From Heteronotia binoei (taxonomy: Eukaryota), in NCBI RefSeq assembly GCF_032191835.1, contig NC_083227.1, positions 24,924,001-24,988,000 on the forward strand: a stretch of 64,000 bases of DNA, written 5' to 3'. Of this stretch, positions 13,212-57,251 are shown piece after piece. A program made the translations under genes and the position numbers. Each line of letters opens with the position of its first letter. The stretch's first letter is position 1. Below the pieces are notes generated by a model. That model ran no database searches and was not told the DNA's origin. It was given only the letters and a program-made list of their open reading frames with translations.

Positions 13212-13314
13212 CCATGAAGCCTAGATCCCTTGGCTTGGTTTCTTCGGAGTCCAAGAGAGTTGACTCTTCTTGAGAGGAATTCATGGATCCATCATTCCTA
13301 ACTGGCTGCAGGCA
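13212..13314 (-). CDS. gene A exon 2 (103 nt), vestigial KRAB-A-like
   Basis: Acceptor TTGTTTCAG|TGC, donor ATGG|GTAAGG. Phase 0 to 1 joins exon 1 to exon 3 in frame. Peptide CLQPVRNDGSMNSSQEESTLLDSEETKPRDLGFMG. Confidence 0.8.
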
Positions 13315-13534
13315 CTGAAACAACAAACAATTTATTTTTCCAGGGCTGACTGACACAATTCAACCTCTGTGGAGTGGGTGGGTAAAAAGATGTATTTTAG
13401 CTTGGCGCCCAAGAAAAAGTAAATTAGCGGAGTCTCAAAGGGGAGGGTGTTCTGAAGGCCACCACAGAAAATGCCATCCCTAGTTGCCACCTGTCTCACC
13501 TCTGAAGGGGAAATCACAGAGAGTACAGCTTGAG

Positions 13535-13880
13535 AAGCAGATCTTAACTGGCAAAGGGTGATTAACACACGGAATTTACTGCCACAGGAGGTGGTGGCAA
13601 CTGAAAGCATAAAAACAGCTTAAAGAGGGGATTGGATAAACATCTGGAGCAGAGGTCCGTCAGTGGCTATTAGCCACAGGGTATTGATGGAACTCTCTGT
13701 CTGGGGCAGTGATGCTCTGTATTCTTGGTGTGTGTGGGGCCACAGTGGGAGGGCTTCCAGTGTCCTGGCCCCACTGATGGACTTCCTGATGGTGCCTGGT
13801 TTTTTGGCCACTGTGACACACAGAGCGTTGGACTGGATGGGTCATTGGGCTGATCCAACATGGCTTCTCTTATGTTCTTA
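13535..13880 (+). mobile_element. CR1 3' end
   Basis: RVIN(T)WNxLPQEVV-type ORF2 end plus 3' UTR ending GGCTTCTCTTATGTTCTTATG. A further CR1 ORF2 fragment follows at about 13920-14190. Confidence 0.8.
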
Positions 13881-14303
13881 TGGAAGAGGGTTGTATGGGA
13901 GGAACACCACCACTAAGGGGGGAGGGACATGATAGAGGTTTATAAAATTAAGCATGGGATGGAGCGTGTTGACCAAGATATAATTTCCACCCTCGCCCAA
14001 AAGACTAGAACTCGAGGGCATCCAATGAAGCTGCTGGGCAGTGGGTTCTGGATGGACAAAAGGAAATACTGCTTTACGCAGAGTGATTACAAAGTGGAGT
14101 TTGCTGGCAGAGGATACAGTGATGGGCACAAGAATAAACAGCTTGAAAAGGGGATTAAACAGATTCATGGAGGATAAGTCTATCAGTGGTGGGTTTGGTG
14201 GCATTATCCCCCACTCAGGTACCCCCCCTCCCTCAACCCTGCCATCCCCAAGACCCACCCCCAAATCGTCAGGAATTTCTCTACCTTGAATCAGCAGCCA
14301 GAG

Positions 14304-14781
14304 CAGGGTTGCCAAGTCTGACTCAAAAAATACCTGGGGCTTTGGGGGTGGAGCCAGGTTGTGAGAAGCAGAAATGAACTCCAAAGGGAGTTCTGGCCAT
14401 CACATGTCGAGGGACCAGATGCCTTTTAAATGCCTTCCCTCTGTTTGGGATAATGAAGGATAGGGGCACCTTCTTTTGGAGCTCATAGAACTGGAACCCC
14501 TGGTCCAATCTTTCTGAAACCTAGGAGATGTTTTGAGGAAAGGCACCAGATCCTATGCTGAAAATCTGGTACCCCTAGTTTAAAAAAACAGCTCCTCCAG
14601 AGCTCCAAATACCCATGGATCAATTCTCCATTATACCCTATGAGAAGCAGTCTTCATAGGGTATAATGGAGTGCCCATCAGACATTTCTCTCCCCCCACA
14701 CACTTTCTGAAGACCTGAAGTAGGAGGAGGGCCTCCAAACTGAGGGAATCCCCTGCCCCCACCTGGGAATTGGCAGCCCTA
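14304..14781. mobile_element. TAGGGTTGCCA-family hAT element
   Basis: CAGGGTTGCCAAG ... TTGGCAGCCCTA termini and the same internal sequence as 4824-5260, in reverse orientation. TSD not conserved. Confidence 0.75.
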
Positions 14782-14966
14782 TTGGGGGGAGGGAGCTTAT
14801 CAGGGATGTTACGCCATAGAGTCCACCCTCCATAGCAGCCATTTCCTCAATGTGAACTGTTTTCTGTAGCTTGGAGATCAGTTGTAATTCCGGGAGAACT
14901 CCAGTCCTCACCTGGAGAATGGCAACCTTAAATCAGCAGTGGTTTCGCGCATGCGCATGTGTGTGT

Positions 14967-15497: not shown

Positions 15498-15532
15498 GTG
15501 TGTGTGTGTGTGAGGTGGAGCAACACACTCAC

Positions 15533-16339
15533 TTGCTTCTCTCCTGTTCTAGCCTCTCCCTGTCTCGACAGGAAATCCTCAGCCAGGGCCACTGCCTGGG
15601 CACAAGTCTCGGCTCTGTTCTCCCTCAGCCAGATCTGGATCTCCAGGGGCAGGACAGTCAGGAACTGCTCTAGGATCAATAGTTCCAGGATCCGCTCCTT
15701 GGTGTTCCTCTCTGGCTTCAGCCACTGGTGGCAGAGATACCAGAGCTGGCTGCAAATCACACGTGGCCCATCTCCTTCTCTGTAGCGCAGCTGCCTGAAG
15801 CAGAGGCGCTGGACCTCAGTGCTTTCCATTGTCTCCTCTTGAATCTCTTCTTTCACCTCTGCAGTGTTTGCCACACCATTATCTTCCAGGGGGCTTTGAA
15901 CCAACTGAGATTCCTTCTCAAGGCCTAGCCAGCTTCGAAGCCATCGCTGGGTTCTAGGCTGTTGGCTGGCATCAGCTGGCCCTTCCAAAGAAGCGAGCGG
16001 CAACTTCAGGTCCTCTGTTGCTTCTTCCTTCTTCTTTGGGTCCCCCCACTGCAAGTGTGGGGACTCCACAGTCTTCAGGAATGCTTGCCACTGTGTTTCC
16101 CAGTGGTGTGTCAAACCCTCCTCCGGCTCCTGTTTAATCACGCAGCTTGGAAATTCGCTCCGGCTAACATGAGTGGGACATGTTTCCTCCAAGTCTGTCC
16201 CAGGTTGCAGATCGGATGGGTCGTCTTCTTCCATTTTTGTCTTTGGCTCTACCACAGTCTGCAAATCAAGGCCCCAACTGAAGTGGGAGTCCTTTCGGTG
16301 GTCATTTTGACTCTGGCCACCACATTCTTTGAAGTCCAT
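15533..16339 (-). CDS. gene A exon 1: SCAN domain with N-terminal extension; full spliced protein about 829 aa (SCAN + 15 C2H2)
   Basis: SCAN motif [54 protein letters not shown]. Donor AAGCAA|GTGAGT at 15533/15532. 807+103+1580 = 2490 nt, in frame. Confidence 0.92.
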
Positions 16340-17025: not shown

Positions 17026-17039
17026 AAATGTCTGATACA

Positions 17040-18353: not shown

Positions 18354-18399
18354 TTTTCCTCTCTGGCAGCCCCAGTCCCCCCCCCCCCGCGGCTGCTGA

Positions 18400-20525: not shown

Positions 20526-21194
20526 ATGACCACAACAGAGGAAGGAATTCCTGTTCAACTAGAGGAAGGGGTGCAGACCGATTTTAAAATGGAGGAGGAA
20601 AGTTCAACAGGTCCCCAGTTGACTGAGGACTCAAGGAAAGCCCCTCACGCCCCTCAACCTGGGAATGTTGGAGAATTCCTGCAAAGGAGTCCAGAAGAAG
20701 ATGTGAAACAGGAAGATGAGGGACAACTTCAGAGATGGGAAGTCCAGTGGCAGGAATACCTGAAGACAATGGAGGCCTCTCAGAATCCACAGCTGAGGAA
20801 CAAATGTGTTTCTTCAGGTGAAGCTCAGGCTGTTTCATCTTCACTTCAAGGTCAGCCTGTCACCATCTGCCATACTGAGGGACAGCAAGTGAAGGAGGCC
20901 CTTGGCTCAGAAGTACAACGCCAGCGCTTCAGACAGTTCCTCTACCTGGAGACTGAGGGCCCCCACAATGTTTGCCACCACCTCCGGAAACTTTGTCATG
21001 GGTGGCTGCAGCCCAAAAGATGCACAAAGGAGCAGATCCTGGAGCTGGTGATCCTGGAGCAGTTCCTGGCCATCCTGCCCCCGGAGATGTTGAACTGGGT
21101 TAAGCAACGGGGCCCAGAGACCTGCTCCCAGGCTGCTGCCCTGGCGGAGGAGTTCCTGCTGGAAAAGCAAGCAGCAGAAGGACCAGAAGAGCGA
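20526..21194 (+). CDS. gene B exon 1: SCAN domain; full spliced protein about 421 aa (SCAN + single C2H2)
   Basis: [54 protein letters not shown]. Donor GAGCGA|GTGAGA, phase 0. Confidence 0.9.
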
Positions 21195-21784: not shown

Positions 21785-22530
21785 CCCAGTGTGGTGTAGC
21801 AGTTAAGTGTGCGGACTCTTATCTGGGAGAACCGGGTTTGATTCCCCACTCCTCCACTTGCAGCTGCTGGAATGGCCTTGGGTCAGCTCTCACAGGAGTT
21901 GTATTTGAAAGGGCAGCTGCTGTGAGAGCTCTCTCTGTGTCAAGTCGGCAGATTCAATAACGAGCCGTTTGTTGAAACAAAATAGCTAGTTTATGGATAC
22001 TGTTGTTTACGACTAGGTTGGTATTGAAAGACTAAAGATCATACAATAAAATGAAATCATATAAGGTACACTTCAAAGGGATTCTTTAGGGAGGGGTACT
22101 ATGCAGGGCACATTCACACATTGATGTTACCAATTCGTTCTCAGGCCTACTTTGGCCTTCAGCGTCTCTGGCTGCAGCCTCCCCCGGTGCCAGGCCTGAG
22201 AAGGCTCAGATAAAATGTTCACATATTCCCATTTCAAAGCATTACTACATAACAAAGAAAAGGAGGGGGTAGGGAGAGTTCAAGCTAGCAGCAATGGAAT
22301 ACAGTTTGGCTTTACCCAGGATGCTTCTCACCTGAGCCAAAGTTAGATACGGGCTTGACCAGAGTTTTATACAGACTTGAAACTCAGCCTCATCTATCTC
22401 ACAGGGTGTCTGTTGTGGCGGGTTGGGGGGGAAGGTAAATGAGATTGTGACTGCTCTGAAGCTCTGAGATTCAGAGTATAGGGTGGGATATAAATCCAAT
22501 ATCATCATCTTCTTCTTCTTCATCATCTTC
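21785..22530 (+). mobile_element. Squam2-like SINE split by a solo LTR
   Basis: Head CAGTGTGGTGTAGCAGTTAAGTGTGCGGAC at about 21787. Body resumes at 22383 and ends GGGATATAAATCCAATATCATCATCTTC. Confidence 0.85.
21938..22382 (-). mobile_element. solo LTR (second family)
   Basis: 445 bp with inverted termini TGTCAAGTC / GACTTGAAA (one mismatch) and 5-bp TSD CTCTG / CTCAG matching the SINE consensus CTCAG. Orientation tentative. Confidence 0.7.
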
Positions 22531-22844
22531 TTCCCTGAGAAAGAGTTGTCAAATCCAGCTTAGGAAATAACTGGAGATTTGGGGGCAAAGTCTGAGGAAA
22601 ATGGAGTTCAGTGGGGTATAATGTCATAGAATCTGCCCTCCAAAGCAGCCATTTCCTCCAGGAGAAACGATCGTGGTAGTCTGGAGATCAGTTGTAATTC
22701 TATGAAACCTCCAGCCCCCACCTGGGGGTTGGCACCCTTAGCCTGTGATGGGACATGGGGTGGTGATGGGGGAATTGCAAGATGCTTGTTTTGCTAGCAC
22801 CTTTTCTGGCCCTGGTCTGAACAGGATCTTCATTTCTGTTTCAG

Positions 22845-22974
22845 GGGCTGGAGCCAAGAGAAGAGGCAGTGCCAGACCCCTCCCAAGCAGCACAGGCTCC
22901 TTTGGACTGCTGGCAGATGACAGTCAACAGGGAGGCAGAACGAGAGGACGATGCTGGAGGTGGAAGTTTCCTGG
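22845..22974 (+). CDS. gene B exon 2 (130 nt), vestigial KRAB-A-like
   Basis: Acceptor TTTCTGTTTCAG|GGG, donor CTGG|GTAAGG. Peptide GLEPREEAVPDPSQAAQAPLDCWQMTVNREAEREDDAGGGSFLG, phase 0 to 1. Confidence 0.82.
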
Positions 22975-23042: not shown

Positions 23043-23330
23043 GACCTCTTTGGTGTAGTGGTTAAGTGTGCGGACTCTTATCTGGGAGAACCAGGTTTGA
23101 TTCCCCTCTCCTCCACTTGCAGCTGCTGTAATGGTCTTGGGTCAGAGCTCTCATAACAGCTGTCCTTGAAAGGGTAGCTGCTGTATGAGCTCTCTGAGCC
23201 CCACCCACCTCACAGGGTGTCTGTTGTGGGGGAGGAAGATAAAGGAGATTGTGAGCTGCTCTGAGGAGAGCCTGAGATTCAGAGTGGAGAGCAGGATATA
23301 AGTCCAATATCATCATCTTCTCCTCCTCCT
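23043..23330 (+). mobile_element. Squam2-like SINE
   Basis: TTTGGTGTAGTGGTTAAGTGTGCGGACTC head; tail GGATATAAGTCCAATATCATC. Confidence 0.85.
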
Positions 23331-24010
23331 CCTCCTCTCCCCTCCTCCATTGATCCTTACAATGACCTTGTTAGATAAGTGGGGTTGCCAACTTTGGGTC
23401 TGGAGGTCTGGGGTGGAGCCTGGGGAAGGCAGAATTTGAGAAGGGGAGGGACCTCAATAGGGGAAAGTGTTTGTGAGTTTCCTGCATTGTACATTGGTTG
23501 GACTAGATGACCCTAGAGGTCCCTTCCAACTCTATGATTCTAGGGTATAATGCTTCCACTTTTTGCAGGGAAGTTGAAATTCCAATAAAACCATAGAGTT
23601 TTTTCAAATGCCAGAACATCCCTGACAATGCACTAACATAACTTCCAGTGCCAGGGATTTTTTTGTAGCAGAAACTCTTTTGCATATTAGGCCACACACC
23701 CCTGATGTGGCCAATCCTCTTGGAGCTTATGGTAAGCCCTGTGCTAAGACCCTTGTAAGCTCTCGGAGGATTGGCTACATCAGGGGTGTGTGGCCTAATA
23801 TGCAAAGGAATTCCTGCTACAAGAAAAGCCCGGGCAGTGCATACAGGAAGTGACATCAGCATGTCTCTGGCAGTGCCATTACATCACAGGCAAGGGGCCC
23901 AACCACACCCTGCCTGCACCAGTCGCCAGGGGGATCTGGCAACCCAGACACCATCTCTGGCTTCACCATTCACTAACAGGTAACCCATGATTCTTTTTGT
24001 CTCTTTGCAG

Positions 24011-24477
24011 GCAAACGGCTCAAAAGAATGACCGAGGAAGAGAAATGTGATCTGGAAGGATCTGTCCACATGGCTGCCAGTGATGTTTCTAAGGGAAGAG
24101 CAAATGAGATGCCTTTTCAGAGCCATAGAGGAGTATCACAGCATCTATACGGGCCGGAACAGAAGGGGAAATGCTCCAGGGCTGAAATGCAAGGGTCAAT
24201 TCCTTCTCACAGCCCCAAACCAGTCTTTAAAACCATCATACAACACAGAATTCACCCATGGCAGAAACCGCCCACAGTTGGTGAGAGAAGTTCTCAGCCG
24301 TCATCAGCCCTTGTAAAACGTGAGCCCACCCAAGAGAGCCGTAAGCCATACTTGTGCTCGGACTGTGGGAAAACTTTCTTCATGTTCTTAGCTCTGAGGA
24401 CTCATCAGAGAACCCACTCAGACCACAAAAGAAACCAAGCAAGAGTAGCGGACCATACAGTAGGCCCAGTGCTATAA
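24011..24477 (+). CDS. gene B exon 3: one intact C2H2 finger plus degenerate finger remnants
   Basis: Acceptor CTCTTTGCAG|GC, phase 1, in frame with ORF 24028-24477. Finger YLCSDCGKTFFMFLALRTHQRTH at 24349-24417. Confidence 0.8.
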
Positions 24478-25339
24478 ACATTGAGAATAGGGTTGTCCTG
24501 CCATGCCTGGCAACCAGTGGGAAGCCCAGGGGCAAGGATATGATGTCCTGTTCACAGCTATGTCACTTCTGGACACAGAGTAGCTCTAGGAATTGCTGGA
24601 AACTCTATGATTTAAATATATGGTTTTACCAGAACATAAGAACATAAGAGAAGCCATGTTGGATCAGGCCAACGGCCCATCAAGTCCAACACTCTGTGTC
24701 ACACAGTGGCAAAAAATTTTATATACACACATGCACTGTGGCTAATAGCCACTGATGGACCTGTGCTCCATATTTTATGGAAAGCAGAAAGCAGCTAGGC
24801 ACCAAGAATCATCAATTCCTCATCAAAACTGGAAGCATTAATTTAGTATCATCTCTCGGCACTCTGTTTCTGTCTGATACATGTGTGTACAGACATTTTA
24901 GTGTACAACTTTGCCTTTCACGTTCCTGGGTACACATATACAGACTGGGGTGCTCAGCAACTACGTATTTCTAGAGGCAATGGGGAAGAGACACATCTGT
25001 CTATAGTGTTGCTTTCCATGTACTGAAGAAGTCATTTGGAGTGTTGGTCTCTGTGGAGAACCTTACCATTGGAAAAGTCACCTGTACCCATCTGATAAAA
25101 ATATGTGGATATTTATCTGCACTTTGAAAGACTTTGGGTGCAGTTCCCATAAAGTATAATGGAGAACTGATCTGTGGGTATCTGGGGAGCATCTGGTGCC
25201 ACTTCTCAAAACAATCCCCAAGTTTCCAAAAAGATTGGACTGGGGGGTCCAATTCTATGAGCCCCCAAAGAAGGTGCCCCATCCTCCATTATTTTCCATG
25301 GAAGGAAGGCATTTAAAAGTAGCACGATCCCTTTAGATA

Positions 25340-25430
25340 GAACAAAGTAGGAGTCCAGTAGCACCTTTAAGACCAACACGGTTTTATTCAGAAGGTAAGC
25401 TTTTGTATGCAGGCATACTTCATCAGACGA
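25340..25430 (-). mobile_element. Penelope-like end with near-intact minimal hammerhead motif
   Basis: Minus strand CTGATGA AGTATGC CT GCATAC AAAA GC TTAC...TGAATAAAACC...GGTCTTAAAGGTGCTAC. Confidence 0.65.
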
Positions 25431-25630
25431 TGGAATGGGGGTACAGTGACCAGAACTACATATAGCTGGTGGGCAGTGATTTAGAATGCAAAATGGTACG
25501 AAGTTAAAATCTATAATATAGTGGGTTCTTAGGCATTGAAGAGGCGATGTGGTAGTGATAAGCACTTTATTGAGTACAGCATGGTAGGTGGCTGCACGAA
25601 CAAGACTAGCGAATGGGGCCCGCTGGGCCA

Positions 25631-26285
25631 TAGGCTTCCCAACCCTCCCGCCCTGGCAGGGGACCCCAGAATTTCCACCCTCTTCCCCCGGTCCCCAAAA
25701 AAATGGAAACGGGGGGAGGGGGGAAACGGCGCCGGGGAGCATGGTGAGCCACCCCATCCTGGAGCGGGTGAGGCTGCCGAGCCGCCGCCCCCTCCCCGCC
25801 CACCGCAGCTGCTCCTCTGAGATGGGCCCAGGCTGAGCCCATCTTGGAGGAGCAGCCAAGAGGCGGCAGCAGCGCAGGCAAAACCAGGGGAGGGCGGAGG
25901 CAGGCCAGGAGCATGGCGAGCTGCGAATACGGGCCCTTCTAGGACCCGGACTCACGGTTCGCCACGCCCCTGGCCCGCCTCCACCCCCCCCCTCCGATTC
26001 CACCCCAGAGGCAGAGCAGAGCCGGCGAGGCCGCCGCGCCGCTGCCGCCCCCCGCCCCACCGCAGCTGCTCCTCCGAGATGGGCTCAGCCTGAGCCCATC
26101 TCGGAGGAGCAGCCATGGCGAGCAGAGAAGAGGTAGCAGCTGCGCAGCGGCGTCGCCCGCTCCGAGACGGGGCAGCTCGCCACGCTCCCCGGCGCTGTTT
26201 CCCCCCCCCCTAGCTCCACCCCAGTGTCTCCTGGCTCCACCCCCAGAGTCCCCAGATATTTCTGGGATTGGACTTGGCAACCCTA
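25631..26285. mobile_element. GC/CpG-rich hAT non-autonomous element with internal palindromes
   Basis: TAGGCTTCCCAA ... TTGGCAACCCTA termini; perfect TSD CTGGGCCA at 25623-25630 and 26286-26293. Confidence 0.88.
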
Positions 26286-26749
26286 CTGGGCCAACTATAT
26301 ACAACACTGGGTTCCCACGCTAGCACGTTATTGGGTCATTCAAACCAGCAGGGGGCCCATGATTGGAGCAGGGCAGTCTGGATTTGGATGCTGCTACCCA
26401 TTGTTCCTAAGTCCCCAAGCTCAGTCCTTCAGGCTACAATGAGCCAGGCAGGAACACCATTTGGTAACACATAGATTCACATACATAACCAAATCCAATG
26501 GCAAAATAGTGAAATTAACAATTGAAAGAACATTTGGCTGGATAGCATTTGTGTGGGAAACCAATAAAACAGTAAGACAGAATGTCTATTAATTACATGT
26601 CAGAATGTCTATTAATTACTCTATTGCTAGCAAGCCTGGGCCAAAATGAGGACATTTTTTCCCCTCAGAGTTTCCCCCCCCCGTCCAACTAATTTACCTT
26701 TTAACATGTAACATACATATAAACATCATTCTAGTTTGCCATTAGTTTA

Positions 26750-27577
26750 GTTTAGTTTATTTGATTTGTATCCTGCCCTCCCCGCCGAAGCAGGCTCAGG
26801 GCGGCTCACAACATGCAGTGAAGTCACAATAAAACAGTTAAATCAAACATCAATTAAAACAGTTAAAACAATAGAAACAATTTGGTGCTAATTACCATTT
26901 AGTTACAGATGGCGTTCAGTATTCTTAGGCATCCTTTAGAGCTAGTATTCCGGCAATTTCAGTTGAAGGCTAACTGAAATAATATTGTCTTGCAGGCCTT
27001 GCGGAACTGGGCAAGGTCCCGCAAGGCTCTGACCTCCTCAGGGAGCTGGTTCCACCAGAAGGCTCTTTCCCTAGTTGTTTTTAGTCTTGCCTCCCTCAGC
27101 CTGGGGATGGATAGTAAATTTTGCGTTCCAGATCTAAGTATCCTCTGGGGAACATGTGGGGAGAGACAGTCCCTAAGGTAGGCAGGTCCTTGGCCATGTA
27201 GGGCTTTAAAGGTAATAACCAACACCTTGTAGCGAATCTAGTATACCACTGGCAGCCAGTGCAGCTCCGCAGCCCCAGCTTATGTGCTCCTGCATGGAGA
27301 GCCCCTATAATAGCCTGGCTGCCGCATTCTGCACCAGCTGTAGTTTTAGGATTCAGGACAAGGGCAGCCCCATGTAGAGGGCATTCCAGTAGTCCAATCT
27401 CGAGGTGACCATTGCATGGATCGCAGTTGCCAGGGCGCTGCGCTTGAGGAAGGGAACCAGCCTGAAATGGTAAAATGGTACCATCCTGAGATGGTAAAAA
27501 GCAGATTTGGCAGTTATCTGAGCCTCCATTGTTAAAGAAGGTTCCAGTAGCACCCCCAAGCATCTGACCTTGGGCAC
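26750..27577 (-). mobile_element. L2 LINE 3' fragment
   Basis: ORF pieces VTSRLDYWNALYMGLPL and LVITFKALHGQGPAYLRD...WNQLPEEVR. The 3' end GTGAGCCGCCCTGAGCC...GGATACAAATCAAATAAA is on the minus strand. Confidence 0.85.
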
Positions 27578-27639
27578 TGTTGTAAGTGTTGCACCACCAA
27601 AAGCTGTGGATATATAGCTATACTCGAGAATCAGGGATT

Positions 27640-27902
27640 TTTTAATAGCAGGAATGCAGTTCCAGCTGGCTTGGTGTCAGGGGGTGTGGCCTAATATGCA
27701 AACAAGTTCCTGCTGGGCTTTTTCCTACAAAAAGCACTGTGTGAAATAATGGTGATATCAAGGGGGTGAAGCCTAATATGCAAATGAGTTCCTGCTGGGC
27801 TTTTTCTACAAAAAGCACTGTGTGAAATAATGGTGATATCAAGGGGGTGAAGCCTAATATGCAAATGAGTTTCTGTTGGGCTTTTTCTACCAAAAAAGCC
27901 CT
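27640..27902. repeat. CAGGGCTTTTT-family MITE containing an ~81-bp tandem triplication
   Basis: GCCTAATATGCAAA recurs at 27689, 27771 and 27852. Confidence 0.8.
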
Positions 27903-30252: not shown

Positions 30253-30957
30253 ATGAGAATGTCTTCCGCCCAGAGAACCTCAGCAGCTCTGGGCCTCCCA
30301 TTCCAGTCAGTGCCAGCAAACATGGTTCCGCTCGAAAGGAATACGAAAGACCAGAACTCTGTGGGCTCCAGCCTTGGAGACAGATTGTCAGGACCTCCAG
30401 AAAACCTTCTTAATGACATCTGGGGGAATGATGAAGACTATCTGAGGTGCAGTGAGGGAGTCCATGTAAGAATAACAGCCCGAAATTCAGAGCCTGCCTC
30501 CTGGGACACCACTAAAACCTCACTGCCCGCAGTAGAGAGAGCGGCATATCCCGGAAGAGAGGTGGCTACCCAGCTCCTGCCAACTGTCAGTGGAGAAGCT
30601 GAACCAGATTCCCTCCGCCTGGACTACAGGGGAGCCCATGAGGATCATCTGGAAAGAGATGCCGCTGCTCTGGAAAAGCTGCGGCGGAACTTCCGGCAGT
30701 TCCGCTACTGGGAGGCCGAGGGGCCCCGGAAGGTTTGCGGCCAGCTGTGGTATCTCTGCCATCGGTGGCTGAAGCCAGAGAAACGCAACAAGGAGCAGAT
30801 CCTGGAGCTGTTAATCCTGGAGCAGTTCCTGGCCATCTTGCCGCCAGAAATGCAGAGCTGGATGGAGAGGAATGGCCCGGGGACCTGTGCCCAAGCGGTG
30901 GCCCTGGCTGAAGAGTTCTTACAGAGGGATCAAGAGGCTGAGCTGTGGGGAGAGCAG
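30253..30957 (+). CDS. gene C exon 1: SCAN domain; full spliced protein about 608 aa (SCAN + 9 C2H2)
   Basis: [54 protein letters not shown]. Donor GAGCAG|GTGAGA. The start codon could be a later in-frame ATG. Confidence 0.9.
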
Positions 30958-32281: not shown

Positions 32282-32402
32282 GCGGCTTTTCCAGAGACGC
32301 CCGTGGATTCCCTTGAAACAGAGCAGATGCCTTCCGAGGCTGCAGAGAAACTGCTCAGCATGGAAGTTAAAGAAGAAGGCTGCAGGGGTGCCAGCCGTCG
32401 AG
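32282..32402 (+). CDS. gene C exon 2 (121 nt), vestigial KRAB-A-like
   Basis: Acceptor TTTTTTCCAG|GCG, donor CGAG|GTACGT. Peptide AAFPETPVDSLETEQMPSEAAEKLLSMEVKEEGCRGASRRG. Confidence 0.82.
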
Positions 32403-32765
32403 GTACGTGTGAGCTTCCTCCAAGGAGTTTGAGGCAGTATACGCAGTTTGCCCCTTCTTCCCCTTTTCCTCACAAGAGCCGGAGGTGAGGGGCCACCGCA
32501 GAAAAAGCCCTGCCAGTCATTATAAAGCCCCACCCCTGAGAACACTCCTGAGATTACAGCTAGTGCCACTTCTGCATTCAATAATGGGAATAAAAGACAG
32601 AGCATGCTTATGTCCCGTTTGTACATATCTTGGTGCCATGTTCTAGCGGAAGAAGAAAAGAAGAAGATGATGATGATGATGATATTGGATTTATATCCTG
32701 CCCTATACTCTGAATCTCAGAGTCTTAGAGCGGTCACAGTCTCCTTTACCTCTCTCCCCCACAAC

Positions 32766-33688: not shown

Positions 33689-33699
33689 CACCCTGTGAG

Positions 33700-35171: not shown

Positions 35172-36172
35172 GTGATTGGCCACTGAATGAAAAGGAGATC
35201 CTACAGCTGGAAAGGCCAAAGCAAATGGAGGTGCCTGAGGGGAGGAAAGGGAGATGCTCCCTGCTTTTGACGGAGGAGGAAACTTCTTCCAATCCTCCCG
35301 GATCAGACAGGGAGCTGGGGAAGGAGCCAACGGATAGCCCTGTTTGCGCCGAGGCCCCTCGCAGTCTTGGTGAATCCGTGACCCAGCAGAAAACCTCCAA
35401 AGGCAAGCTAGAAACAACTTGTAGCGTGTGTGGGAAGAGCTTTAGCCGGAGGACGGGCCTCTTGGCCCACGAGAGGGTCCACACGGGAGAGAAGCCGTAC
35501 AAGTGCACTCACTGTGGGAGAAGCTTCCAATCCAAGTCGACCCTCGTGGTCCACCAGAGAACCCACACAGGGGAGAAGCCCTACCAGTGCAGGGAGTGCG
35601 GAAAGAGCTTCCCAGTGACCACGCAGCTGATCGAGCACGAGCGGACCCACTCGGGGGAGAAGCCCTACGAGTGTGCCGAGTGCGGGCAGACGTTCCGCCA
35701 GAGGTCGCACCTGAAGAACCACCAGAAGATCCACACGGGAGTCAAGCCATTCAAGTGCTCCTACTGCGGGAAGGGCTTCAGCATCAGCTCGGACCTCATC
35801 CGACACGAGAGGGCCCACACGGGAGAGAAGCCCTACCAGTGTCCGGACTGCGGCAAGCGGTTCTGCAACAGCTCGCAGGTGATCACTCACCGGCGGGTCC
35901 ACACGGGGGAGAAGCCGTACAAATGCCTGGAGTGCGGGAAAGGGTTCACTGTCAGCCAGCAGCTGATCCGACACCAGGCGGTCCACACGGGGGAGAAGCC
36001 GTATCAGTGCCTGGAGTGCGGGAAGACCTTTGGCGTCAGCACGCTGCTGGCCGGCCACCTGAGGATCCACACGGGAGAGAAGCCGTACGAATGCTCGGAA
36101 TGCGGAAAGTGCTTCCGGCTCCGCTCCACGCTCATCACGCACTTGAAAATCCACACTGCCAGAAAAACTTAA
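35172..36172 (+). CDS. gene C exon 3: 9 tandem C2H2 fingers, CpG-rich
   Basis: Acceptor TTCTCACAG|GT GAT TGG, phase 1. 705+121+1001 = 1827 nt in frame; stop TAA at 36170-36172. Confidence 0.95.
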
Positions 36173-36950: not shown

Positions 36951-37577
36951 TGATTTCATTTCATCCTGTTGGTTCATGAGTTGCTCATCATGTGGTGTGT
37001 GGTGATCCTAGACCTGGGACTTCTTTTGTAGCAGGAATTAGGCCACACACTCCTGATGTAGCCAATCCTCCAAGAGTTTACATAGCTCTTCGTATAGGGC
37101 CTACTGTAATCTCTTGGAGGACTGGCTACAGTGTGTGGCCTAAAATGCAAAGGAGTTCCTGCTACAAAAAAAAGCCCTGCTTACAACAAACCAGTAAGGT
37201 AGATCATGATTATGTTTTCTGTATTGGAGACAGGTAGAGAGAGTGTGACTTGGCTAAGGTCAGCCAGTGAAGTCATGTTGAAGGCAAGAGAAAAATGAAA
37301 AAATTAGTAATTCTAATGGGGGAAACTGAGCTATGTCCGTTCTGGATTCAAAAAACGATGTCTGTGAAAATATTCTTCGCTGGTTGCTTTAAAAGTTCTA
37401 GATGAAGAAGAACGAAGACGAGAGGCTAAAGGCTGGGTGGGGGAGTTTTAGTGTTTAAAATCTGACTCACATGGTAGATGAAAGCAATGGGGATTAGGAG
37501 TTAGGGGACCCCCTGGGGTAAAATCAGAGTCAAAAACACAAGCTGCCAACAGAAAAAAAAAAGATCCTGTTCTTTTA

Positions 37578-37845
37578 AGAAGAAGAACACAAATTTATAC
37601 CCCATCCTTCTCTCTGAATCAGAGTCTTAAAGCAGTTTATAATCTCCTTTATCTTCTTCCCCCACAACAGACACTCTGTGAAGTAGGTGGAGCTGAGAGA
37701 GCTCTCCCAGAAGCTGCCCTTTCAAGGACAACTGCCAGAGCTATGGCTGACCCAAGACCATTCCAGCAGCTGCAAGTGGAGGACTGGGAAATCAAACCTG
37801 GTTCTCCCAGCTAAGAGTCCACACACTTAACCACTACACCAAACA
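37578..37845 (-). mobile_element. Squam2-like SINE
   Basis: Collinear with 42241-42515 in reverse orientation. Confidence 0.8.
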
Positions 37846-43499: not shown

Positions 43500-44237
43500 A
43501 TGTGGAAGGAGCCAAAGATGTTCTTGCATCGCAACAGAGAGGAAATGGAGCAGGTGGAAATGACACAGGTAGATCCCCAGGTCAAAGTGCCAAAAGCACT
43601 GAGGGCAGAGCCAGGAAATTCTATAAGGGAGCTGGACAGACTGCAATCAAAAGTGGACAAGGTGCTTGGCAGAAACCCAGAGGATGTTGTCGAAGGCAAA
43701 GACCCTACACAGCAAGAGTTTCCAATGGAGGTGCAGTTGCCTAATTCAGGATGGGAAAGGCCAAAGCCTGTCTTAAGCAATGTTACCAAGGCCTGTCTGT
43801 CCTCACTCAAAGGGGGAAATAGTCAAAGAGACGGGGCAAGCCACCTCCATCCAGGCCTTGCTGGAGAAGGTGAGGAGGCCTATAGCTGCTCAGACTCCGG
43901 GGCAGCTTATGAGAGTGAGGTTGAGGCCACAAGGAAAGATGCTGCCGTCATGGAGTCCCAACGGCAGAACTTCCGGCAGTTCCTCTACCAGGAGGCTGAG
44001 GGCCCCTGCGAGGCATGCAGCCAACTCTGGTACCTCTGCCATCGGTGGCTGAGGCCGGAGAGGCACACCAAGGAGTGGATCCTGGAGGTCTTGATTCTGG
44101 AGCAGTTCCTGGCCATCCTGCCATCAGAGATGCGAAACTGGGTGAGGGAACACGAACCAGTGACCTGTTCCCAGGCGGTCGCCCTGGCTGAGGATTTCCT
44201 GTTGAAGCAAGAAAAGGCTGGGAGACCTGACGGACAG
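43500..44237 (+). CDS. gene D exon 1: SCAN domain; full spliced protein about 606 aa (SCAN + 9 C2H2)
   Basis: [54 protein letters not shown]. Donor GGACAG|GTAAGA, phase 0. Confidence 0.9.
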
Positions 44238-46870: not shown

Positions 46871-46952
46871 GTGGCTGCCATCCTTTCTCCTGAGGCAGAT
46901 GGAGCTCCTTCAGATAGCGGAGAGAAGCTGTTGCGTCCTGAAGTCAAACAAG
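46871..46952 (+). CDS. gene D exon 2 (82 nt), vestigial KRAB-A-like
   Basis: Acceptor TTGTTTCAG|GTG. The only frame-preserving donor is CAAG|GTGATT. Peptide VAAILSPEADGAPSDSGEKLLRPEVKQ. Confidence 0.68.
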
Positions 46953-48130: not shown

Positions 48131-49168
<1,038 letters not shown>

Positions 49169-49185
49169 AAACTGTTTGTTGTGGG

Positions 49186-49950: not shown

Positions 49951-50622
49951 CAGGCCCGTAGCTGCAATGGGGCCTAGGGGGGCAGGCCCATCCTTTAAAA
50001 AAAAAACCCCAAACCCTCCAACTGTGTGGCCCCTCCATTGGAGGACCCCAGTCTGTCTCCTTTGCTCACCACAACTCTGAACAAGTAGTAGCATTGCTGC
50101 TGGTCTTTTTGCTTTTTTTCTCTCCTCTTCCCTAACACAACATGCAGAACAAAAAGGGGGGAGTCTTCTTGCAGCTGCTGCAATGGCCTTGGGTCAGCCA
50201 TAGCTCTCAGAGTTGTCCTTGAAAGGGCAGCTGCTGTGAGAGCCCTTTCATCCCCACCCACCTCGCAGGGTGTCTGTTTTGAGGGGAGAAGATATAGGAG
50301 ATTGTAATCCGCTCTAAGTCTCTGATTCAGAAAGAAGGGCGGGGTATAAATGTGCAATTCTTCTTGCAGCCAGCCTTCCGAGCACCCAACTTCAGTTCAA
50401 GAGGTCTCCGTCTCTCTGAGAGAGTGGCACATAAGAAAGGAGGTGGGGGAGCGGAGCTGCTGTGACTGCCCTGGTGAGGAGGGGTTAGCTTGCGGAACTC
50501 AAGGCAGCTTACAGTGCGCGGAGCCTTGGGCTGCCAAAACACATGCCCCCCCCCCACCCTCCCCAAACAACAAATCCTGCTGTGGGCCCCACCAAAAATG
50601 AAATCCCAGCTACAGCCCTAGT
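49951..50622. mobile_element. CAGGCCCGTAGC-TIR element with nested Squam2-like SINE (about 50165-50362)
   Basis: Internal sequence is the reverse complement of 60060-60330; termini CAGGCCCGTAGCTG / CAGCTACAGCCCT. Confidence 0.7.
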
Positions 50623-51049
50623 CTGACAGGTTCAAGTCACCATGGGAGTGTGGGGATTCAAACCTGGTCCAGCGCTCTAACCACTAGCTTCCCCGATAAA
50701 ATAAATACATTTTTTGGAACATATTATTTCCCACTTAATAACAACCACAGTCTGATACAATTCCCATCACTGCTGAATCTTTGTTCAGAAGTGGTGAATT
50801 TTTATGCCACAGATGTCCCATATTGCCGCTTAAGCCAGACAGAATTACAGAACTGGACCCCTTTGCTGAGATCCTATGACAGTGGTAGAGCCTCTGCTTG
50901 GTGTGCAGAAAGTGCCAGGTTCAATCCCTGGAATCTCCAGGGTTTTTTTTTTAACGGGCCAAGCCGAAAGTGATGAAAGAGACCTCTGCCAAAGACCCTG
51001 GAAAGCTGCTGCCAGTTTAAGTGGACAATACTGACCTCCATGGACCAAG

Positions 51050-51487
51050 GTGAGGAGTCTGGAGACCAAGTCCTATGAGGAAAGGTTGAAGGAGCTGGGC
51101 ATGTTTAGCCTGGAGAGGAGGCGGCTGAGAGGTGATGTGATCACCATCTTCAAGTACTTGAAGGACTGTCATATAGAGGATGTTGTGGAATTGTTTTCTG
51201 TGGCCCCAGAAGGTAGGAGCAGAACCAATGGGTTGAAATTAAATCAAAAGAGTTTCCGGCTCAACATTAGGAAGAACTTCCTGACGGTTAGAGAGGTTCC
51301 TCAGTGGAACAGGCTTCCTCAGGAGTTGGTGAGCTCTCCTTCCTTGGAGGTTTTTAAACAGGCAAGATGGCCATCTGACAGCAATGAAGATCCTGTGAAT
51401 TTAGGGGAAGGGGTATTTGTGAATTTTCTGCATTATACAGGGGGTTGGACTGTATGACCCTGGAGATCCCTTCCAACTATGATTCTA
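51050..51487 (+). mobile_element. CR1 3' end with intact ORF2 tail
   Basis: 135-aa ORF SYEERLKELGMFSLERRRLRGD...IRKNFLTVREVPQWNRLP and an ATGATTCTA tail; abuts a tRNA-SINE head at about 50873-51048. Confidence 0.9.
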
Positions 51488-53560: not shown

Positions 53561-53841
53561 GGTGTTGTGCATTGAGCTTTATTGGTTATAATCTGGGGTA
53601 TCGCCTGATCTATTGCACAGACTATTGGGGTGCAGTGTGATTTTATTTTATTGCATTGCTTATTGTGGAGTATAGGCAAAGTAAATAAATACAAAATCTG
53701 TTACATTGGGCCGAAGTGGGTAATCACTTCGGCAATTCCGAGCCAGATGTGCTAGCCCTGTAAAAAGTTGCAGGGAGGGTGTCTGGGGATTTTGGTCGCC
53801 CTGGTTTTTTTGCTGGTAGGTGCAAGAAGCTGGTGGGTAAA

Positions 53842-54312
53842 TAGGCTTGTCAAGTCCAATTCAAGAAATATTTGGGGACTTTGGGGGGTGGAGCTAGGAG
53901 CAAGGTTGTGACAAGCATTATTGACCCCTAAAGGGAGTTCTGGTTGCACACCTTTTAAATGCCTTCCCTCCACTAGAAATAATGAAGGATAGGGGCACCT
54001 TCTTTGGGGGCTCATAGAATTGGACACCTGGTCCCATCTTTTTGAAACTTGGAGGGTATTTTGAGGAGAGTCACCGGATGCTATGCTGCAAATTTGGTGC
54101 CTCTGCCTCAAAAAACAGCCCCCCCCCCGAGCCCCAGATACCCACAGATTAATTCTCTATTATGCCCTATGGGAATTGGTCTCCATAGGGAATAATGGAG
54201 TGCCCAGCAGACATTTCCCTCCCCCTCCACACACTTTCTGATGACCCTGGAGTGGGGGGAGGGCCCCCAAACTGGGGGATCCCCTGCCCCCACCTGGGGA
54301 TTGGCAACCCTA
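53842..54312. mobile_element. TAGGGTTGCCA-family hAT element
   Basis: Perfect TSD TGGGTAAA at 53834-53841 and 54313-54320. Confidence 0.9.
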
Positions 54313-55617
54313 TGGGTAAATTACACAGGTGAACCCTGTGGTTACATAGTGGAGAGGGGCATCAGATGGCAAAGAAGGGAGATATCATGGGGGTGGAGAG
54401 AAAGCTGGCGTTTTGGCTGTGAAGACCACCTGCAGTCAGATCTCATATTAAGCTCTTTTGGTCCCCTGTTGGAAGCAAATTGCATATCTTGACATGGGTG
54501 TGAGGTTGATTAGGTTGAGAGAGGCAGACAGTCAGCAACAGTTAATATTTCCTCTGGCCATCCAGCAACTCAGGTGGAACTCTGCTGAAGCCCATTTAAA
54601 TTAGTTATCCAGATATCCACACACAACAGAATTTGATTCATATTGCCTGGAGTGACAGCAGTAGCATTCAAACTTTTAAAATGTTGTGAGCCACTCTGAG
54701 CCCTGTGTTGCGGGAGAGTGGTGGGATTGAAATCGAATAAATAAATAGGAACATAAGGGAAGCCATGTTTGATCAGGCTAATGGCCCATCCAATCCGACA
54801 CTCTGTGTCACACAGTGGCCAAAAAACACCCAGGTGCCATCAGGAGGTCCATCAGTGGGGCCAGGACACTAGAAGCCCTCCCACTGTGCCCCCCGCAAGC
54901 ACCAAGAATACAGAGCATCACTGCCCCAGACAGAGAGTTCCATCAATACGCTGTAGTTCTGCATGGAGCACAGAAATATTTGTCTCTTGCTGCTGTGCTG
55001 CTCTGTCACTGACTTAAATTTGCTAATGGAGAACTCAGAGGGATTGAGTGACCTTATGAGTGCCTGTATTTATGTGGGATCTCAAAGGGAAACTTTCCTT
55101 CATGCTTTCATTATGTCTCTGTTTTGTTTTTTATCTTAGGGTAGCCAGCCATTTCCTGGACAACACCTGTAAAAGGCCCCCCCCCCCCTTGGTGCTTTGT
55201 AGACTCCCCAGAAACATCTGTTAGTCCCTGTGGGACCAGCATATAGGTGGGCAGCTATCTGGCAACTGGGTAAATTGAATATGGTTGAGGTAGCAGGTGC
55301 CCTATTATTCCATCATTTGGCCTCCCTTGTGGTAACATCATGCTCATTACAGTGCAACTGGTTGTGATATGCTGTGCCCTGTCTGCCAATGGTGTGTTTT
55401 ATTTATTGTTTTTACTGTTAATTTAAACCGGTGTTTTAACTTTGATATGTAAGCTTTTATTGCTGTGATCCGCCTTGAGCCTGTAATGGGAAAAGGTGGA
55501 ATATAAGCCTATTAAAATAAATAAATAAATGTACAGCAATCTTTTTGAAGATACAGGGTCTGGAGAGGTAGCGAGAGGCCATTTGGAATTAGGGTCGTTC
55601 TTGCCCTGAAAGGCTAA

Positions 55618-56299
55618 ATGGCTGCCATTCAAGGGGCTGAAGGGGCCTTGGCTGTTCTACTGTTAGCAGTCAAAATGGAGGATCTTGGTCTGGTAGGACT
55701 TGAGAGAGAGGGAAGACCCTCTTGTGATTCCAAGGCTGGGGAGGAACAGGATTTTCTGAAATGGGGGCAACTGAAGGAGGAACCAGATGTCAAGAAGCTT
55801 CAGCAGGGTTCAGAATCACAGGAACATCTTGAGGTGACCCGCTTAGAATGGGGAAGCCCACAAGCACCACGGCCTGTGTGATGGGATAACACTAAGGACA
55901 CCTGAGAAGCTGCTGATGTTGACCGAAGGCCCCAAGCTGTGAGAAGGTTAGAGACCAGAAATGAGGGGGAGTGTCTGAAGGAGAGAGAAGAGACCACCAC
56001 GGATGATGATCCAAGTGCCACTGACATGCGGCGAAAGCTGTTCAGGGAATTCCTCTTCCAGGAGGCTGAGGGGCCCTATGTGGCCTGTGGCAGTCTCTGG
56101 TACCTCAGCCATCAGTGGCTGAAGCCGGAGAGGCACACTAAGGAGCAAATCCTGGAGCTGGTGACCCTGGAGCAGTTCCTGGCCATACTAGATCCAGTGC
56201 TGGGTCAAAGCTGGCCACCCACAAAGCTGTGCCCAGGCGGTGGCCCTGGCGGAAGGCTTCCTGCTGAAGCAGAGGGAGAGCAAGAAGCTGGAAGAACAG
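55618..56299 (+). pseudogene. locus E exon 1: disabled SCAN exon
   Basis: In-frame TGA at 55879-55881 and 55903-55905. Frameshift at about 56189 after EQFLAIL; the shifted frame restores [26 protein letters not shown] and the donor GAACAG|GTAAGG. Confidence 0.9.
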
Positions 56300-57148
56300 G
56301 TAAGGAAGTCTCCTGGGAAATCGAAAAGATTTATGTGCATGTAATGGTGGCAAGGAGCAGGCAACAGCCTGTTCCTATCAGCATTAGCCACTGCCTTTTG
56401 TAGCCCACACATCACAGATTTTTTTGGAAGGAGGAGGTATCTGTTCCAGTGTTGAACATCATAAGAACTTAAGAAGAGCCCTGCTGGGTCAGACCAGTGG
56501 TCCATCTGGTCCAGCATCCTGTCTCACGCAGTGGCCAAGCAGTTCCTCTGGAGGGCCAAGAAGAAGGCAGAGGTTGAGGCCTTTGCCTGATGTTGCCTCC
56601 TGGCTCTGGGATTCAGAGGCAGAATACCTCTGAACATCGAAGTTCCCCTCAGTCATCGTGGCCACTGATAGACTTATCCTTCATGAATCTAACAAGTTGT
56701 ATGTTGTATATAGTGCATTTTATGTGTTTATTGTGACATTTTTATTTATGACTGGAACCCGCCCTGAGCCTGTTTTGGCGGGATGGATGGATGGGGTAGA
56801 AATCCCGTCAAATAAATATTTCTAATCCCCCTTTAAAGCTTATTCCTATGGCCATCACTACATCTTCTGGCAGCAAATTCCGTATTTTAATCACTTTCTG
56901 TGTTTCGATGTATTTTGAATAGTTTTGATGATGTATGTTTTTTTGGGGGGGAGGGGGTTAATGGTTGTAAAATGCAATTTAATTATGTATGTTTTAATTT
57001 GTTAGCTACCTTGGCAGCTCTGGTGAGGGCAGAAGGGTGGGATACAATAAAATAAATAAAATCTTGTAAAATAAATATAAGTGAAATATTGGGAGTAAAT
57101 GCATAAACTCTGAGCGGCAGTGAACTGCGCCTTCCCTGCTCTTTTAAG

Positions 57149-57251
57149 GTGGTGATGCCAATCCAGGTGACAACTGTGGCCTCTGGAACTCCAATGGATG
57201 CTGGGAAGAGGCAAGTGGGGACCAAGGATGGCAGGGATGCCAGCACACTGG
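57149..57251 (+). pseudogene. locus E exon 2 (103 nt)
   Basis: Acceptor CTCTTTTAAG|GTG, donor CTGG|GTGAGC, phase 0 to 1. Peptide VVMPIQVTTVASGTPMDAGKRQVGTKDGRDASTLG. Confidence 0.75.

What the first reader, a model, noticed from the sequence alone, without database searches (positions are those of the whole stretch)
13212..57251. Middle exon of all five SCAN-ZNF loci appears to be a decayed KRAB-A exon (candidate TRIM28-independent subfamily)
Seen: each locus has a short phase 0-to-1 exon (103, 130, 121, 82 and 103 nt) between the SCAN and finger exons. The gene C peptide AAFPETPVDSLETEQMPSEAAEKLLSMEVKEEGCRGASRRG aligns without gaps to a 41-residue KRAB-A consensus recalled from memory ([41 protein letters not shown]), with 10 identities by hand. 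Gene A has SQEESTLLD against SQEEWALLD. Gene B has APLDCWQMTVNREAERE and gene D has APSDSGEKLLRPEV, both keeping the A-x-x-D-x-x-Q/E spacing. Established: the KRAB-A exon is typically about 127 nt and phase 0-to-1, and its DV, EEW and MLE residues are needed for TRIM28/KAP1 binding. None of the five exons keeps these motifs intact. Inference: the cluster descends from a SCAN-KRAB-ZNF ancestor, lost repressor recruitment, and kept the exon as a linker, so these proteins may act as activators or through other cofactors.
Basis: partly seen in the sequence, partly recalled or inferred. Interest (0 to 1): 0.75.

Follow-up and report, generated by a model that had tools for sequence, protein, structure and literature searches.

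The report
Vestigial KRAB-A exon in SCAN-ZNF genes
The short middle exon of these five lizard SCAN zinc-finger genes is a worn-down copy of the KRAB-A repressor exon, an old relic shared by many squamate paralogues and of a kind already described in mammals.

Summary
All five loci have a short phase 0-to-1 exon with good splice sites (103, 130, 121, 82, 103 nt) between a SCAN exon and a finger exon.

The five peptides give no Pfam KRAB hit on their own. They belong to an exon family I call X1, found directly after the SCAN exon in at least 62 gene units of geckos, lacertids, skinks, cordylids, anguids and amphisbaenians.

- **Membership:** genes C, B and D score 25-33 bits against an X1 model, A 10.6 and E 4.6. 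No shuffle out of 1000 reaches any of them.
- **X1 versus canonical KRAB-A:**
- **Pfam:** KRAB is the only recurrent family among X1 peptides (6 of 67, best E 0.001).
- **Geometry:** exon size, phase and the final Leu-Gly split codon also match.

Two corrections. The decay is ancient and family-wide, not special to this cluster. In some relatives X1 sits upstream of an intact 127-nt KRAB-A exon, which the window genes lack. Gene E is a pseudogene and gene B keeps one finger.

Loss of TRIM28 binding fits the replaced key residues but is untested. The scan reported the same relic 7.7 Mb away (s1-323889).

The parts
15533..16339 (-). Gene A, first coding exon with SCAN domain (ATG 16339, donor after 15533, phase 0)
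   Evidence: Pfam SCAN E 2.7e-35; ORF and donor
13212..13314 (-). Gene A, middle exon X1 (103 nt, phase 0 to 1). A vestigial KRAB-A exon that keeps the Leu-Leu-Asp core.
   Evidence: Splice sites. X1 model 10.6 bits, 0 of 1000 shuffles reach it. Only E 0.26 in a whole-window six-frame scan.
9472..11051 (-). Gene A, finger exon (phase-1 acceptor at 11051, 15 fingers)
20526..21194 (+). Gene B, SCAN exon
   Evidence: Pfam SCAN E 1e-36; donor
22845..22974 (+). Gene B, middle exon X1 (130 nt, phase 0 to 1)
   Evidence: X1 model 27.8 bits, 0 of 1000 shuffles; six-frame scan E 9.6e-7
24011..24477 (+). Gene B, last exon with a single C2H2 finger (truncated array)
30253..30957 (+). Gene C, SCAN exon
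   Evidence: Pfam SCAN E 7.6e-37; donor
32282..32402 (+). Gene C, middle exon X1 (121 nt, phase 0 to 1), the best-preserved copy in the window
35172..36172 (+). Gene C, finger exon (9 fingers).
43500..44237 (+). Gene D, SCAN exon
   Evidence: Pfam SCAN E 6.4e-39; donor
46871..46952 (+). Gene D, middle exon X1 (82 nt, phase 0 to 1), shortened at both ends
   Evidence: X1 model 25.3 bits; six-frame scan E 3.4e-6
48168..49168 (+). Gene D, finger exon (9 fingers)
55906..56400 (+). Gene E, SCAN exon remnant. The SCAN model is split over two reading frames at about 56192-56214, so the gene is a pseudogene.
57149..57251 (+). Gene E, middle exon X1 remnant (103 nt, splice sites kept, sequence nearly unrecognisable)
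   Evidence: X1 model 4.6 bits, 0 of 1000 shuffles; not found in the whole-window scan
59093..59621 (+). Gene E, finger exon remnant, frameshifted, with one intact finger

Best explanation
Each locus is a three-coding-exon SCAN-ZNF gene: a SCAN exon, a middle exon and a finger exon. The middle exon belongs to an exon family, here called X1, that descends from a KRAB-A exon.

**What X1 keeps.** It keeps the slot directly after the SCAN exon, the phase (0 to 1), roughly the length (82-130 nt against 127) and the terminal Leu-Gly split codon. About 45% of the KRAB-A consensus survives (Phe-Glu-Glu, Glu-x-Glu, Asp, Gln-Arg-x-Leu-x-Arg-Glu, Glu).

**What X1 has lost.** The residues that mutagenesis in mammals ties to TRIM28/KAP1 binding are replaced. 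Trp of EEW is mostly Gln and never a majority Trp. Met-Leu of MLE is mostly Lys-Gln. Val of DV is variable.

**Age.** The decay predates the split of geckos from other squamates and is shared by most SCAN-ZNF paralogues.

**Relatives.** Some carry, downstream of X1, a small 56-nt exon and an intact 127-nt KRAB-A exon. The window genes have neither, and no remnant of either is detectable.

**Inferred, not shown.** In genes A, C and D the proteins dimerise through SCAN and bind DNA through the fingers. X1 would serve as a conserved acidic spacer that no longer recruits TRIM28. It is possibly reused as a Lys-x-Glu (SUMO-type) or acidic motif.
For: **The window exons belong to X1.**
- phmmer of exons B, C and D finds the segment 10-46 residues after SCAN in many relatives (E 1.7e-7 to 1e-3).
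- An X1 model built without window sequences scores C 32.9, B 27.8, D 25.3, A 10.6 and E 4.6 bits. None is reached by 1000 shuffles.
- It picks B, C and D as the top three of 2693 six-frame pieces of the window.

**X1 is homologous to KRAB-A.**
- hhalign of 62 X1 exons against canonical KRAB-A of SCAN-KRAB relatives: probability 97.5, P 8.6e-12, 42 ungapped columns.
- 100 column shuffles: mean score 7.1, maximum 11.7, against 47.0 observed. The reversed alignment scores 6.7.
- The result holds with X1 taken only from proteins that also carry a true KRAB (P 2.7e-8). It also holds with the least KRAB-like half of X1 (P 1.3e-8).
- The tool's own hhalign gives P 3.1e-9 over 43 columns.
- Pfam KRAB is the only family hit by more than one of 67 X1 peptides: 6 members, best E 0.00097.

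**Exon structure.**
- Hemicordylus P0028: SCAN exon | X1 121 nt, phase 0 to 1 | 56 nt, phase 1 to 0 | KRAB-A 127 nt, phase 0 to 1 | finger exon in phase 1.
- Anolis P0157: an intact 127-nt KRAB-A exon directly follows the SCAN exon.
- Hemicordylus P0160 has half-decayed KRAB-A exons. Their place directly after SCAN is inferred from protein coordinates; the SCAN-exon junction was not recovered.

**Key residues and spread.** Column table. Carriers are named: geckos, a cordylid, an anguid, a skink, lacertids and an amphisbaenian.
Against: - None of the five window peptides hits Pfam KRAB even at E 10.
- No X1 exon of any relative reaches Pfam's gathering score (best in the per-protein scan: 17.1 bits against 20.4).
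- Against a squamate KRAB model the five peptides alone are only marginally above shuffles.
- Gene A is a weak X1 member and gene E a marginal one.
- A PDB-wide profile search puts a mouse KRAB structure second, but at E 0.8.
- Nothing here measures TRIM28 binding, repression or SUMOylation.
Confidence: 0.82

Rival explanations
1. The middle exon is an ordinary acidic linker exon unrelated to KRAB. The resemblance comes from composition and chance.
For: No Pfam hit for the five peptides. The single-peptide scores against a KRAB model are close to shuffles. The PDB search is not significant.
Against: The profile-profile match runs over the full KRAB-A length without gaps at P 1e-8 to 1e-11. That is about 25 standard deviations above column shuffles, which keep composition. 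Pfam KRAB is the only recurrent family. Exon slot, phase, size and terminal codon are the same. A graded series runs from intact to decayed.
Confidence: 0.04
2. History variant 1. The ancestor of these genes had the full arrangement SCAN | X1 | 56-nt exon | intact KRAB-A | fingers. The window lineage lost the last two exons together. Together they are 183 nt, so the frame is kept. X1 would then be an old tandem duplicate of the KRAB-A exon.
For: The arrangement exists in Hemicordylus, Zootoca and Rhineura. Removing 56 + 127 nt preserves phase. In mammals the KRAB exon of SCAN-KRAB genes is described as the third exon after SCAN, and KRAB loss is recurrent (PMC2443715). Units with a canonical KRAB need only 3 changes of state on the SCAN tree.
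Against: No remnant of a canonical KRAB-A exon is found in any window intron (best E 0.76, intergenic and on the wrong strand). The SCAN tree is unresolved and unrooted. No gecko gene with this arrangement was seen among those named.
Confidence: 0.4
3. History variant 2. X1 is the original KRAB-A exon of the founding SCAN-KRAB-ZNF gene and decayed early. The intact KRAB-A in some relatives was acquired later, for example by fusion with a neighbouring KRAB-ZNF gene.
For: An intact or half-decayed KRAB-A exon occupies the X1 slot in some Anolis and Hemicordylus genes. X1-only genes are by far the commonest type (59 units against 10-18). The 56-nt exon often carries a Met a few residues before the KRAB.
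Against: That Met is not conserved in position. There is no direct evidence of a fusion. The literature on mammals fits variant 1 as well.
Confidence: 0.3
4. X1 is still a working, divergent KRAB that recruits TRIM28 or a related cofactor despite the changed residues.
For: X1 is somewhat better conserved than its unstructured flanks among lacertid orthologues: 88-95% against 79-92%. Lizard KRAB consensus already departs from the mammalian one (PMC3971581).
Against: The invariant Trp and Met of the relatives' true KRAB-A are replaced in nearly all X1 exons, and the Leu-Leu core becomes Pro-Ser. In the window, D lacks the N-terminal third, and A and E lack the C-terminal half.
Confidence: 0.1

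Closest known systems
KRAB loss by in-place sequence degeneration in mammalian SCAN-KRAB-ZNF genes (Tadepally et al. 2008, PMC2443715)
   Same: An exon in a SCAN-ZNF gene keeps its place and splice structure while the KRAB becomes unrecognisable at protein level. KRAB loss is described as recurrent in this family.
   Different: Those cases are recent and gene-specific, still over 82% identical in DNA between orthologues. Here one decay event is shared by dozens of paralogues across squamates and shows only at profile level. The relic can coexist with a second, intact KRAB-A exon.
Variant KRAB domains of old KZFPs that do not recruit TRIM28, many of them SCAN-bearing (reviewed in PMC4592553; variant-KRAB papers listed, not read)
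   Same: A KRAB-derived segment next to a SCAN domain with changed TRIM28-contact residues.
   Different: Variant KRABs still pass KRAB domain models. X1 does not (best 17.1 bits against 20.4), and its Trp and Met-Leu are gone.
KRAB-like region of PGBD1, a SCAN + decayed KRAB + transposase gene (PMC9538788)
   Same: A decayed KRAB after a SCAN domain that is missed by automatic domain searches.
   Different: PGBD1 is one mammalian gene, with Ka/Ks near 1 for that part. X1 is a multi-gene exon family that shows some conservation.
Canonical KRAB-A box (Pfam PF01352)
   Same: Collinear over about 42 residues. The exon is about 127 nt, phase 0 to 1, ends in Leu-Gly with a split codon, and lies upstream of the finger exon.
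   Different: X1 is below the Pfam threshold and its DV, EEW and MLE hallmarks are not kept.

Membership tests
KRAB box (Pfam PF01352) | Score at or above Pfam's gathering threshold (20.4 bits) | tested here: not met
   0 of 5 window peptides hit at E up to 10. The best relative in the per-protein scan scores 17.1 bits. 6 of 67 X1 peptides hit below threshold, best E 0.00097.
KRAB box (Pfam PF01352) | Homology to KRAB-A over its length (profile level) | tested here: met
   hhalign P 8.6e-12, 3.1e-9, 2.7e-8 and 1.3e-8 over 35-43 ungapped columns. Column shuffles reach at most 11.7 against 47.0.
KRAB box (Pfam PF01352) | KRAB-A exon geometry: about 127 nt, phase 0 to 1, ends in Leu-Gly with a split codon, lies before the finger exon | tested here: met
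   Window exons are 103, 130, 121, 82 and 103 nt, all phase 0 to 1. A, B and E end in Met/Leu + G|gt. True KRAB-A exons of relatives are 127 nt, phase 0 to 1.
KRAB box (Pfam PF01352) | TRIM28-contact residues DV, EEW and MLE (mutagenesis in mammals; established knowledge) | tested here: not met
   In X1 the Trp column is Gln 45%, Glu 15% and Lys 11%. The Met column is Lys 71% and the Leu column Gln 61%. None of the five window exons keeps any of the three motifs intact.
KRAB box (Pfam PF01352) | Binds TRIM28 and represses when tethered | not testable with these tools
   This needs co-immunoprecipitation and a reporter assay.
SCAN-C2H2 zinc-finger genes | SCAN domain (PF02023) upstream of tandem C2H2 fingers in one gene | tested here: met
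   SCAN E 1e-35 to 1e-39 in A-D, with 15, 1, 9 and 9 fingers. In E the SCAN is split by a frameshift and one finger is left.
Squamate post-SCAN exon family X1 (defined here) | Significant match to the X1 model built from relatives only, in the exon that follows the SCAN exon | tested here: met
   C 32.9, B 27.8, D 25.3, A 10.6 and E 4.6 bits, with 0 of 1000 shuffles each. A and E are weak in a whole-window scan.

The most novel reading that the evidence does not exclude
X1 is the original KRAB-A exon of the founding SCAN-KRAB-ZNF gene, next to which the retrotransposon gag fragment was captured. It has survived for about 200 million years as a cryptic module with a new job, for example a Lys-x-Glu/acidic SUMO-type motif in place of Met-Leu-Glu. 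The intact KRAB-A of some squamate SCAN genes is then a later re-acquisition. If the same relic sits in the middle exons of mammalian SCAN-ZNF genes, every SCAN-ZNF gene would carry a hidden KRAB.
Probability: 0.2. Interest if true: 0.7.

Novelty: new member of a known kind. Interest (0 to 1): 0.42.

Why it matters
It settles the origin of an unannotated exon found in dozens of squamate transcription-factor genes. It also supports the view that SCAN-ZNF genes descend from KRAB-bearing ancestors.

Domain-based censuses of lizard ZNF genes undercount KRAB ancestry, because this relic falls below the Pfam KRAB threshold.

The series from intact through half-decayed to vestigial KRAB-A, all in one exon slot, is a natural set of variants. 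With it one could test which residues squamate TRIM28 needs.

Tried and rejected
**Tried, with little or no yield**
- Pfam on the five peptides at E 10: nothing.
- A first crude model of the whole SCAN-to-KRAB linker was too gappy. Together with single-peptide KRAB scores it gave equivocal results. It was replaced by an iterated X1 profile and profile-profile comparison.
- My first reading was that X1 lies between SCAN and a true KRAB in relatives, so it cannot be a KRAB. I rejected it when the same search hit the true KRAB core in the same register and hhalign confirmed it.
- Six-frame scan of the window for canonical KRAB-A remnants: none.
- SCAN-domain tree to order the architectures: unresolved and unrooted.
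- PDB profile search: a KRAB structure ranks second but at E 0.8.
- Emerson and Thomas 2011 is not held in the library.
- The look-up of encoding contigs failed for two non-longest isoforms. It worked with the longest isoforms.

**RNA evidence**
- The look-up of sequencing runs listed RNA runs.
- Those places were sent to no search tool afterwards. A local script did scan the whole window's translation with a SCAN model and a finger pattern inside the sandbox.

**Left out on purpose**
All searches were done exon by exon, by reference.
- The big word-index protein search was not used.

Full report
**Layout**

The window holds five SCAN-C2H2 loci. Gene A lies on the minus strand and genes B-E on the plus strand.
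- Pfam finds complete SCAN domains in A-D (E 1e-35 to 1e-39) and a partial one in E.
- Finger arrays have 15 (A), 1 (B), 9 (C), 9 (D) and about 1 (E) fingers.
- In E the SCAN model is split over two reading frames near 56192-56214 and the finger exon is frameshifted, so E is a pseudogene. B is truncated after one finger.

**The observation**

- The five middle exons are 13212-13314 (minus strand), 22845-22974, 32282-32402, 46871-46952 and 57149-57251. They measure 103, 130, 121, 82 and 103 nt.
- All have polypyrimidine-AG acceptors and GT donors and a length of 3n+1.
- The SCAN exons of A-D end in phase 0 at conserved donors, and the finger exons have good phase-1 acceptors. The three-exon models are therefore in frame.
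Everything was searched exon by exon.
Only 37 of 100,000 shuffles reach that number at the fixed register.

**Direct test**

Pfam on the five peptides gives no family at all at E up to 10.

**Relatives**

A full phmmer search with the SCAN exon of gene C returned 150 representatives. Those that were named are all squamate:
- Podarcis, Lacerta and Zootoca;
- Hemicordylus, Anolis and Crotalus;
- Sphaerodactylus and Eublepharis;
- Elgaria, Tiliqua and Rhineura.

The ten closest relatives have SCAN and fingers but no Pfam KRAB. Ten others have SCAN and a clear KRAB (E 1e-15 to 1e-23). Nine of these ten have 45-105 residues between the two domains.

**The exon family X1**

- Exons B, C and D match the stretch 10-46 residues after SCAN in many relatives (E 1.7e-7 to 1e-3).
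- An iterated profile built only from KRAB-less relatives has a core consensus of the form Phe-Pro-Glu-Ala-Glu-Gln-Ala-Pro-Ser-Asp ... Gln-Arg-Gln-Leu-x-Arg-Glu-Ala-Lys-Gln-Glu.
- A model built from 62 such exons, with no window sequence in it, scores C 32.9, B 27.8, D 25.3, A 10.6 and E 4.6 bits. No shuffle out of 1000 reaches any of these values.
- In a six-frame scan of the whole window it ranks B, C and D first (E 1e-6 to 1e-8). A scores E 0.26 and E is not found.

**A turn in the argument**

In SCAN-KRAB relatives the profile hits a segment between SCAN and the true KRAB strongly (E 3e-10 to 1e-4). X1 is therefore not the decayed remains of that KRAB.

I followed this up in five ways.
- X1 (62 exons) against canonical KRAB-A of the relatives: hhalign probability 97.5, P 8.6e-12, score 47.0, 42 ungapped columns covering nearly all of KRAB-A.
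- Controls: 100 column shuffles of X1 give mean 7.1, SD 1.6 and maximum 11.7. The reversed alignment gives 6.7.
- X1 taken only from proteins that also have a true KRAB (n = 8): P 2.7e-8.
- The half of X1 least like KRAB (n = 31, none above 2.5 bits singly): P 1.3e-8.
- The tool's hhalign of alignment A1 (5 window exons + 62 X1) against A2 (10 Pfam-verified KRAB-A): probability 96.1, P 3.1e-9, 43 columns.

Two further searches used independent models.
- **Curated Pfam model:** it agrees. Among the 67 peptides KRAB is hit by 6 (best E 0.00097), and no other family by more than one. In a separate per-protein scan, P0079, P0085, P0122 and P0096 hit at E 0.004-0.14.
- **PDB profile search:** it is not significant (a mouse KRAB structure ranks second at E 0.8).

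**Exon structure**

| Gene | Structure after the SCAN exon |
|---|---|
| Hemicordylus P0028 (locus L002) | X1 3612-3732 (121 nt, phase 0 to 1); small exon 4203-4258 (56 nt, phase 1 to 0); KRAB-A 6855-6981 (127 nt, phase 0 to 1); finger exon in phase 1. The SCAN exon ends in phase 0. |
| KRAB-less P0079 (L001) | X1 (130 nt), then straight to the finger exon, as in the window |
| Anolis P0157 (L004) | An intact 127-nt KRAB-A exon (9261-9387) directly after the SCAN exon (donor 7197, phase 0), that is, in the X1 slot |
| Hemicordylus P0160 (L003) | Half-decayed KRAB-A exons (Trp lost). Their place after SCAN is inferred from protein coordinates; the SCAN junction was not recovered. |

Both X1 and KRAB-A exons end in Leu plus the first base of a Gly codon, as do window exons A, B and E.

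**Key residues**

- The true KRAB-A of the relatives has invariant Trp and Met.
- In X1 the Trp column is mostly Gln. Leu-Leu becomes Pro-Ser, Met becomes Lys (71%) and the next Leu becomes Gln (61%). The final Glu is kept (76%).
- About 19 of 42 consensus positions are identical between X1 and KRAB-A (my count).
- 35 of 62 X1 exons carry a hydrophobic-Lys-x-Glu motif, against 1 of 27 true KRABs. This fits a SUMO consensus, but that is my inference only.
- Among lacertid orthologues X1 is 88-95% identical. SCAN is 92-95% and the unstructured flanks 79-92%. This is a hint of constraint from few sites.

**History**

The window introns hold no remnant of a canonical KRAB-A exon (best E 0.76, intergenic and on the wrong strand).

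The SCAN tree is unresolved and unrooted, although units with a canonical KRAB cluster in few groups.

I therefore cannot say whether the window lineage lost the 56-nt and KRAB-A exons or never had them. Together those two exons are 183 nt, so their loss would keep the frame.

**Known work**

- Tadepally et al. 2008 (PMC2443715) described KRAB loss by in-place degeneration, and by exclusion of the exon, in mammalian SCAN-KRAB genes.
- Liu et al. 2014 (PMC3971581) counted 89 SCAN-ZNF and 240 SCAN-KRAB-ZNF models in Anolis. They noted that the lizard KRAB consensus departs from the mammalian one.
- PGBD1 has a decayed KRAB-like part after its SCAN domain (PMC9538788).
- The phenomenon is therefore of a known kind. 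I found no description of the squamate-wide relic exon or of its coexistence with an intact KRAB-A, but the library is incomplete.
- Another note of this scan (s1-323889) reports the same relic in four genes 7.7 Mb away. It agrees with my result but is not independent evidence.

**Limits**

- Nothing here tests function.

Noticed in passing
window 55906-56400 and 59029-59621: Gene E is a pseudogene. The SCAN model is split between two frames near 56192-56214, and the finger exon is frameshifted with one intact finger. Its X1 exon still has good splice sites.
   Followed up: partly
window 23977-24477: Gene B has an intact SCAN exon and X1 exon, but its last exon ends after a single C2H2 finger. 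No further fingers appear in any frame downstream.
   Followed up: partly
L002 4203-4258, and the equivalent part of other SCAN-X1-KRAB relatives: A conserved 56-nt exon (phase 1 to 0) lies between X1 and the intact KRAB-A. It has a Cys-Gly-Gly-Val-Glu ... Gln-Gly motif, often with a Met. It might be the former first coding exon of a KRAB-ZNF gene.
   Followed up: no
L003 4723-4848 and 8121-8247 (Hemicordylus P0160): Two KRAB-A exons that are half decayed (Trp lost, Asp-Pro-x-Gln-Arg-Ala-Leu kept). They are natural intermediates between canonical KRAB-A and X1. Their position directly after SCAN is inferred from protein coordinates only.
   Followed up: partly
window 51035-51454 (+), 27099-27676 (-), 33027-33710 (-): Open frames that look like fragments of LINE reverse-transcriptase genes, in introns and between the genes. 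This is judged by eye only.
   Followed up: no
window 22248-22559 (-), 23065-23370 (-), 32526-32852 (+), 37482-37811 (+), 49998-50396 (-): A repeated element gives similar open frames with a Leu-Asp-Leu-Tyr-Pro motif after a Lys/Met-rich run. It occurs in several introns and spacers and is probably a SINE or other interspersed repeat.
   Followed up: no
window 25209-26440: A G+C-rich stretch between genes B and C has long open frames on both strands, rich in Gly, Ala and Arg. It may be a CpG island or a low-complexity region.
   Followed up: no
window 63250-63998: A purine-rich low-complexity repeat that reads as Glu/Gly/Arg/Lys runs in several frames.
   Followed up: no
window 11051, 35172, 59093 (starts of finger exons): The finger exons of this family start with a shared Gly-Asp-(Gly)-Trp ... 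Asn-Glu motif that is also seen in relatives. It is a second small conserved element of unknown role.
   Followed up: no
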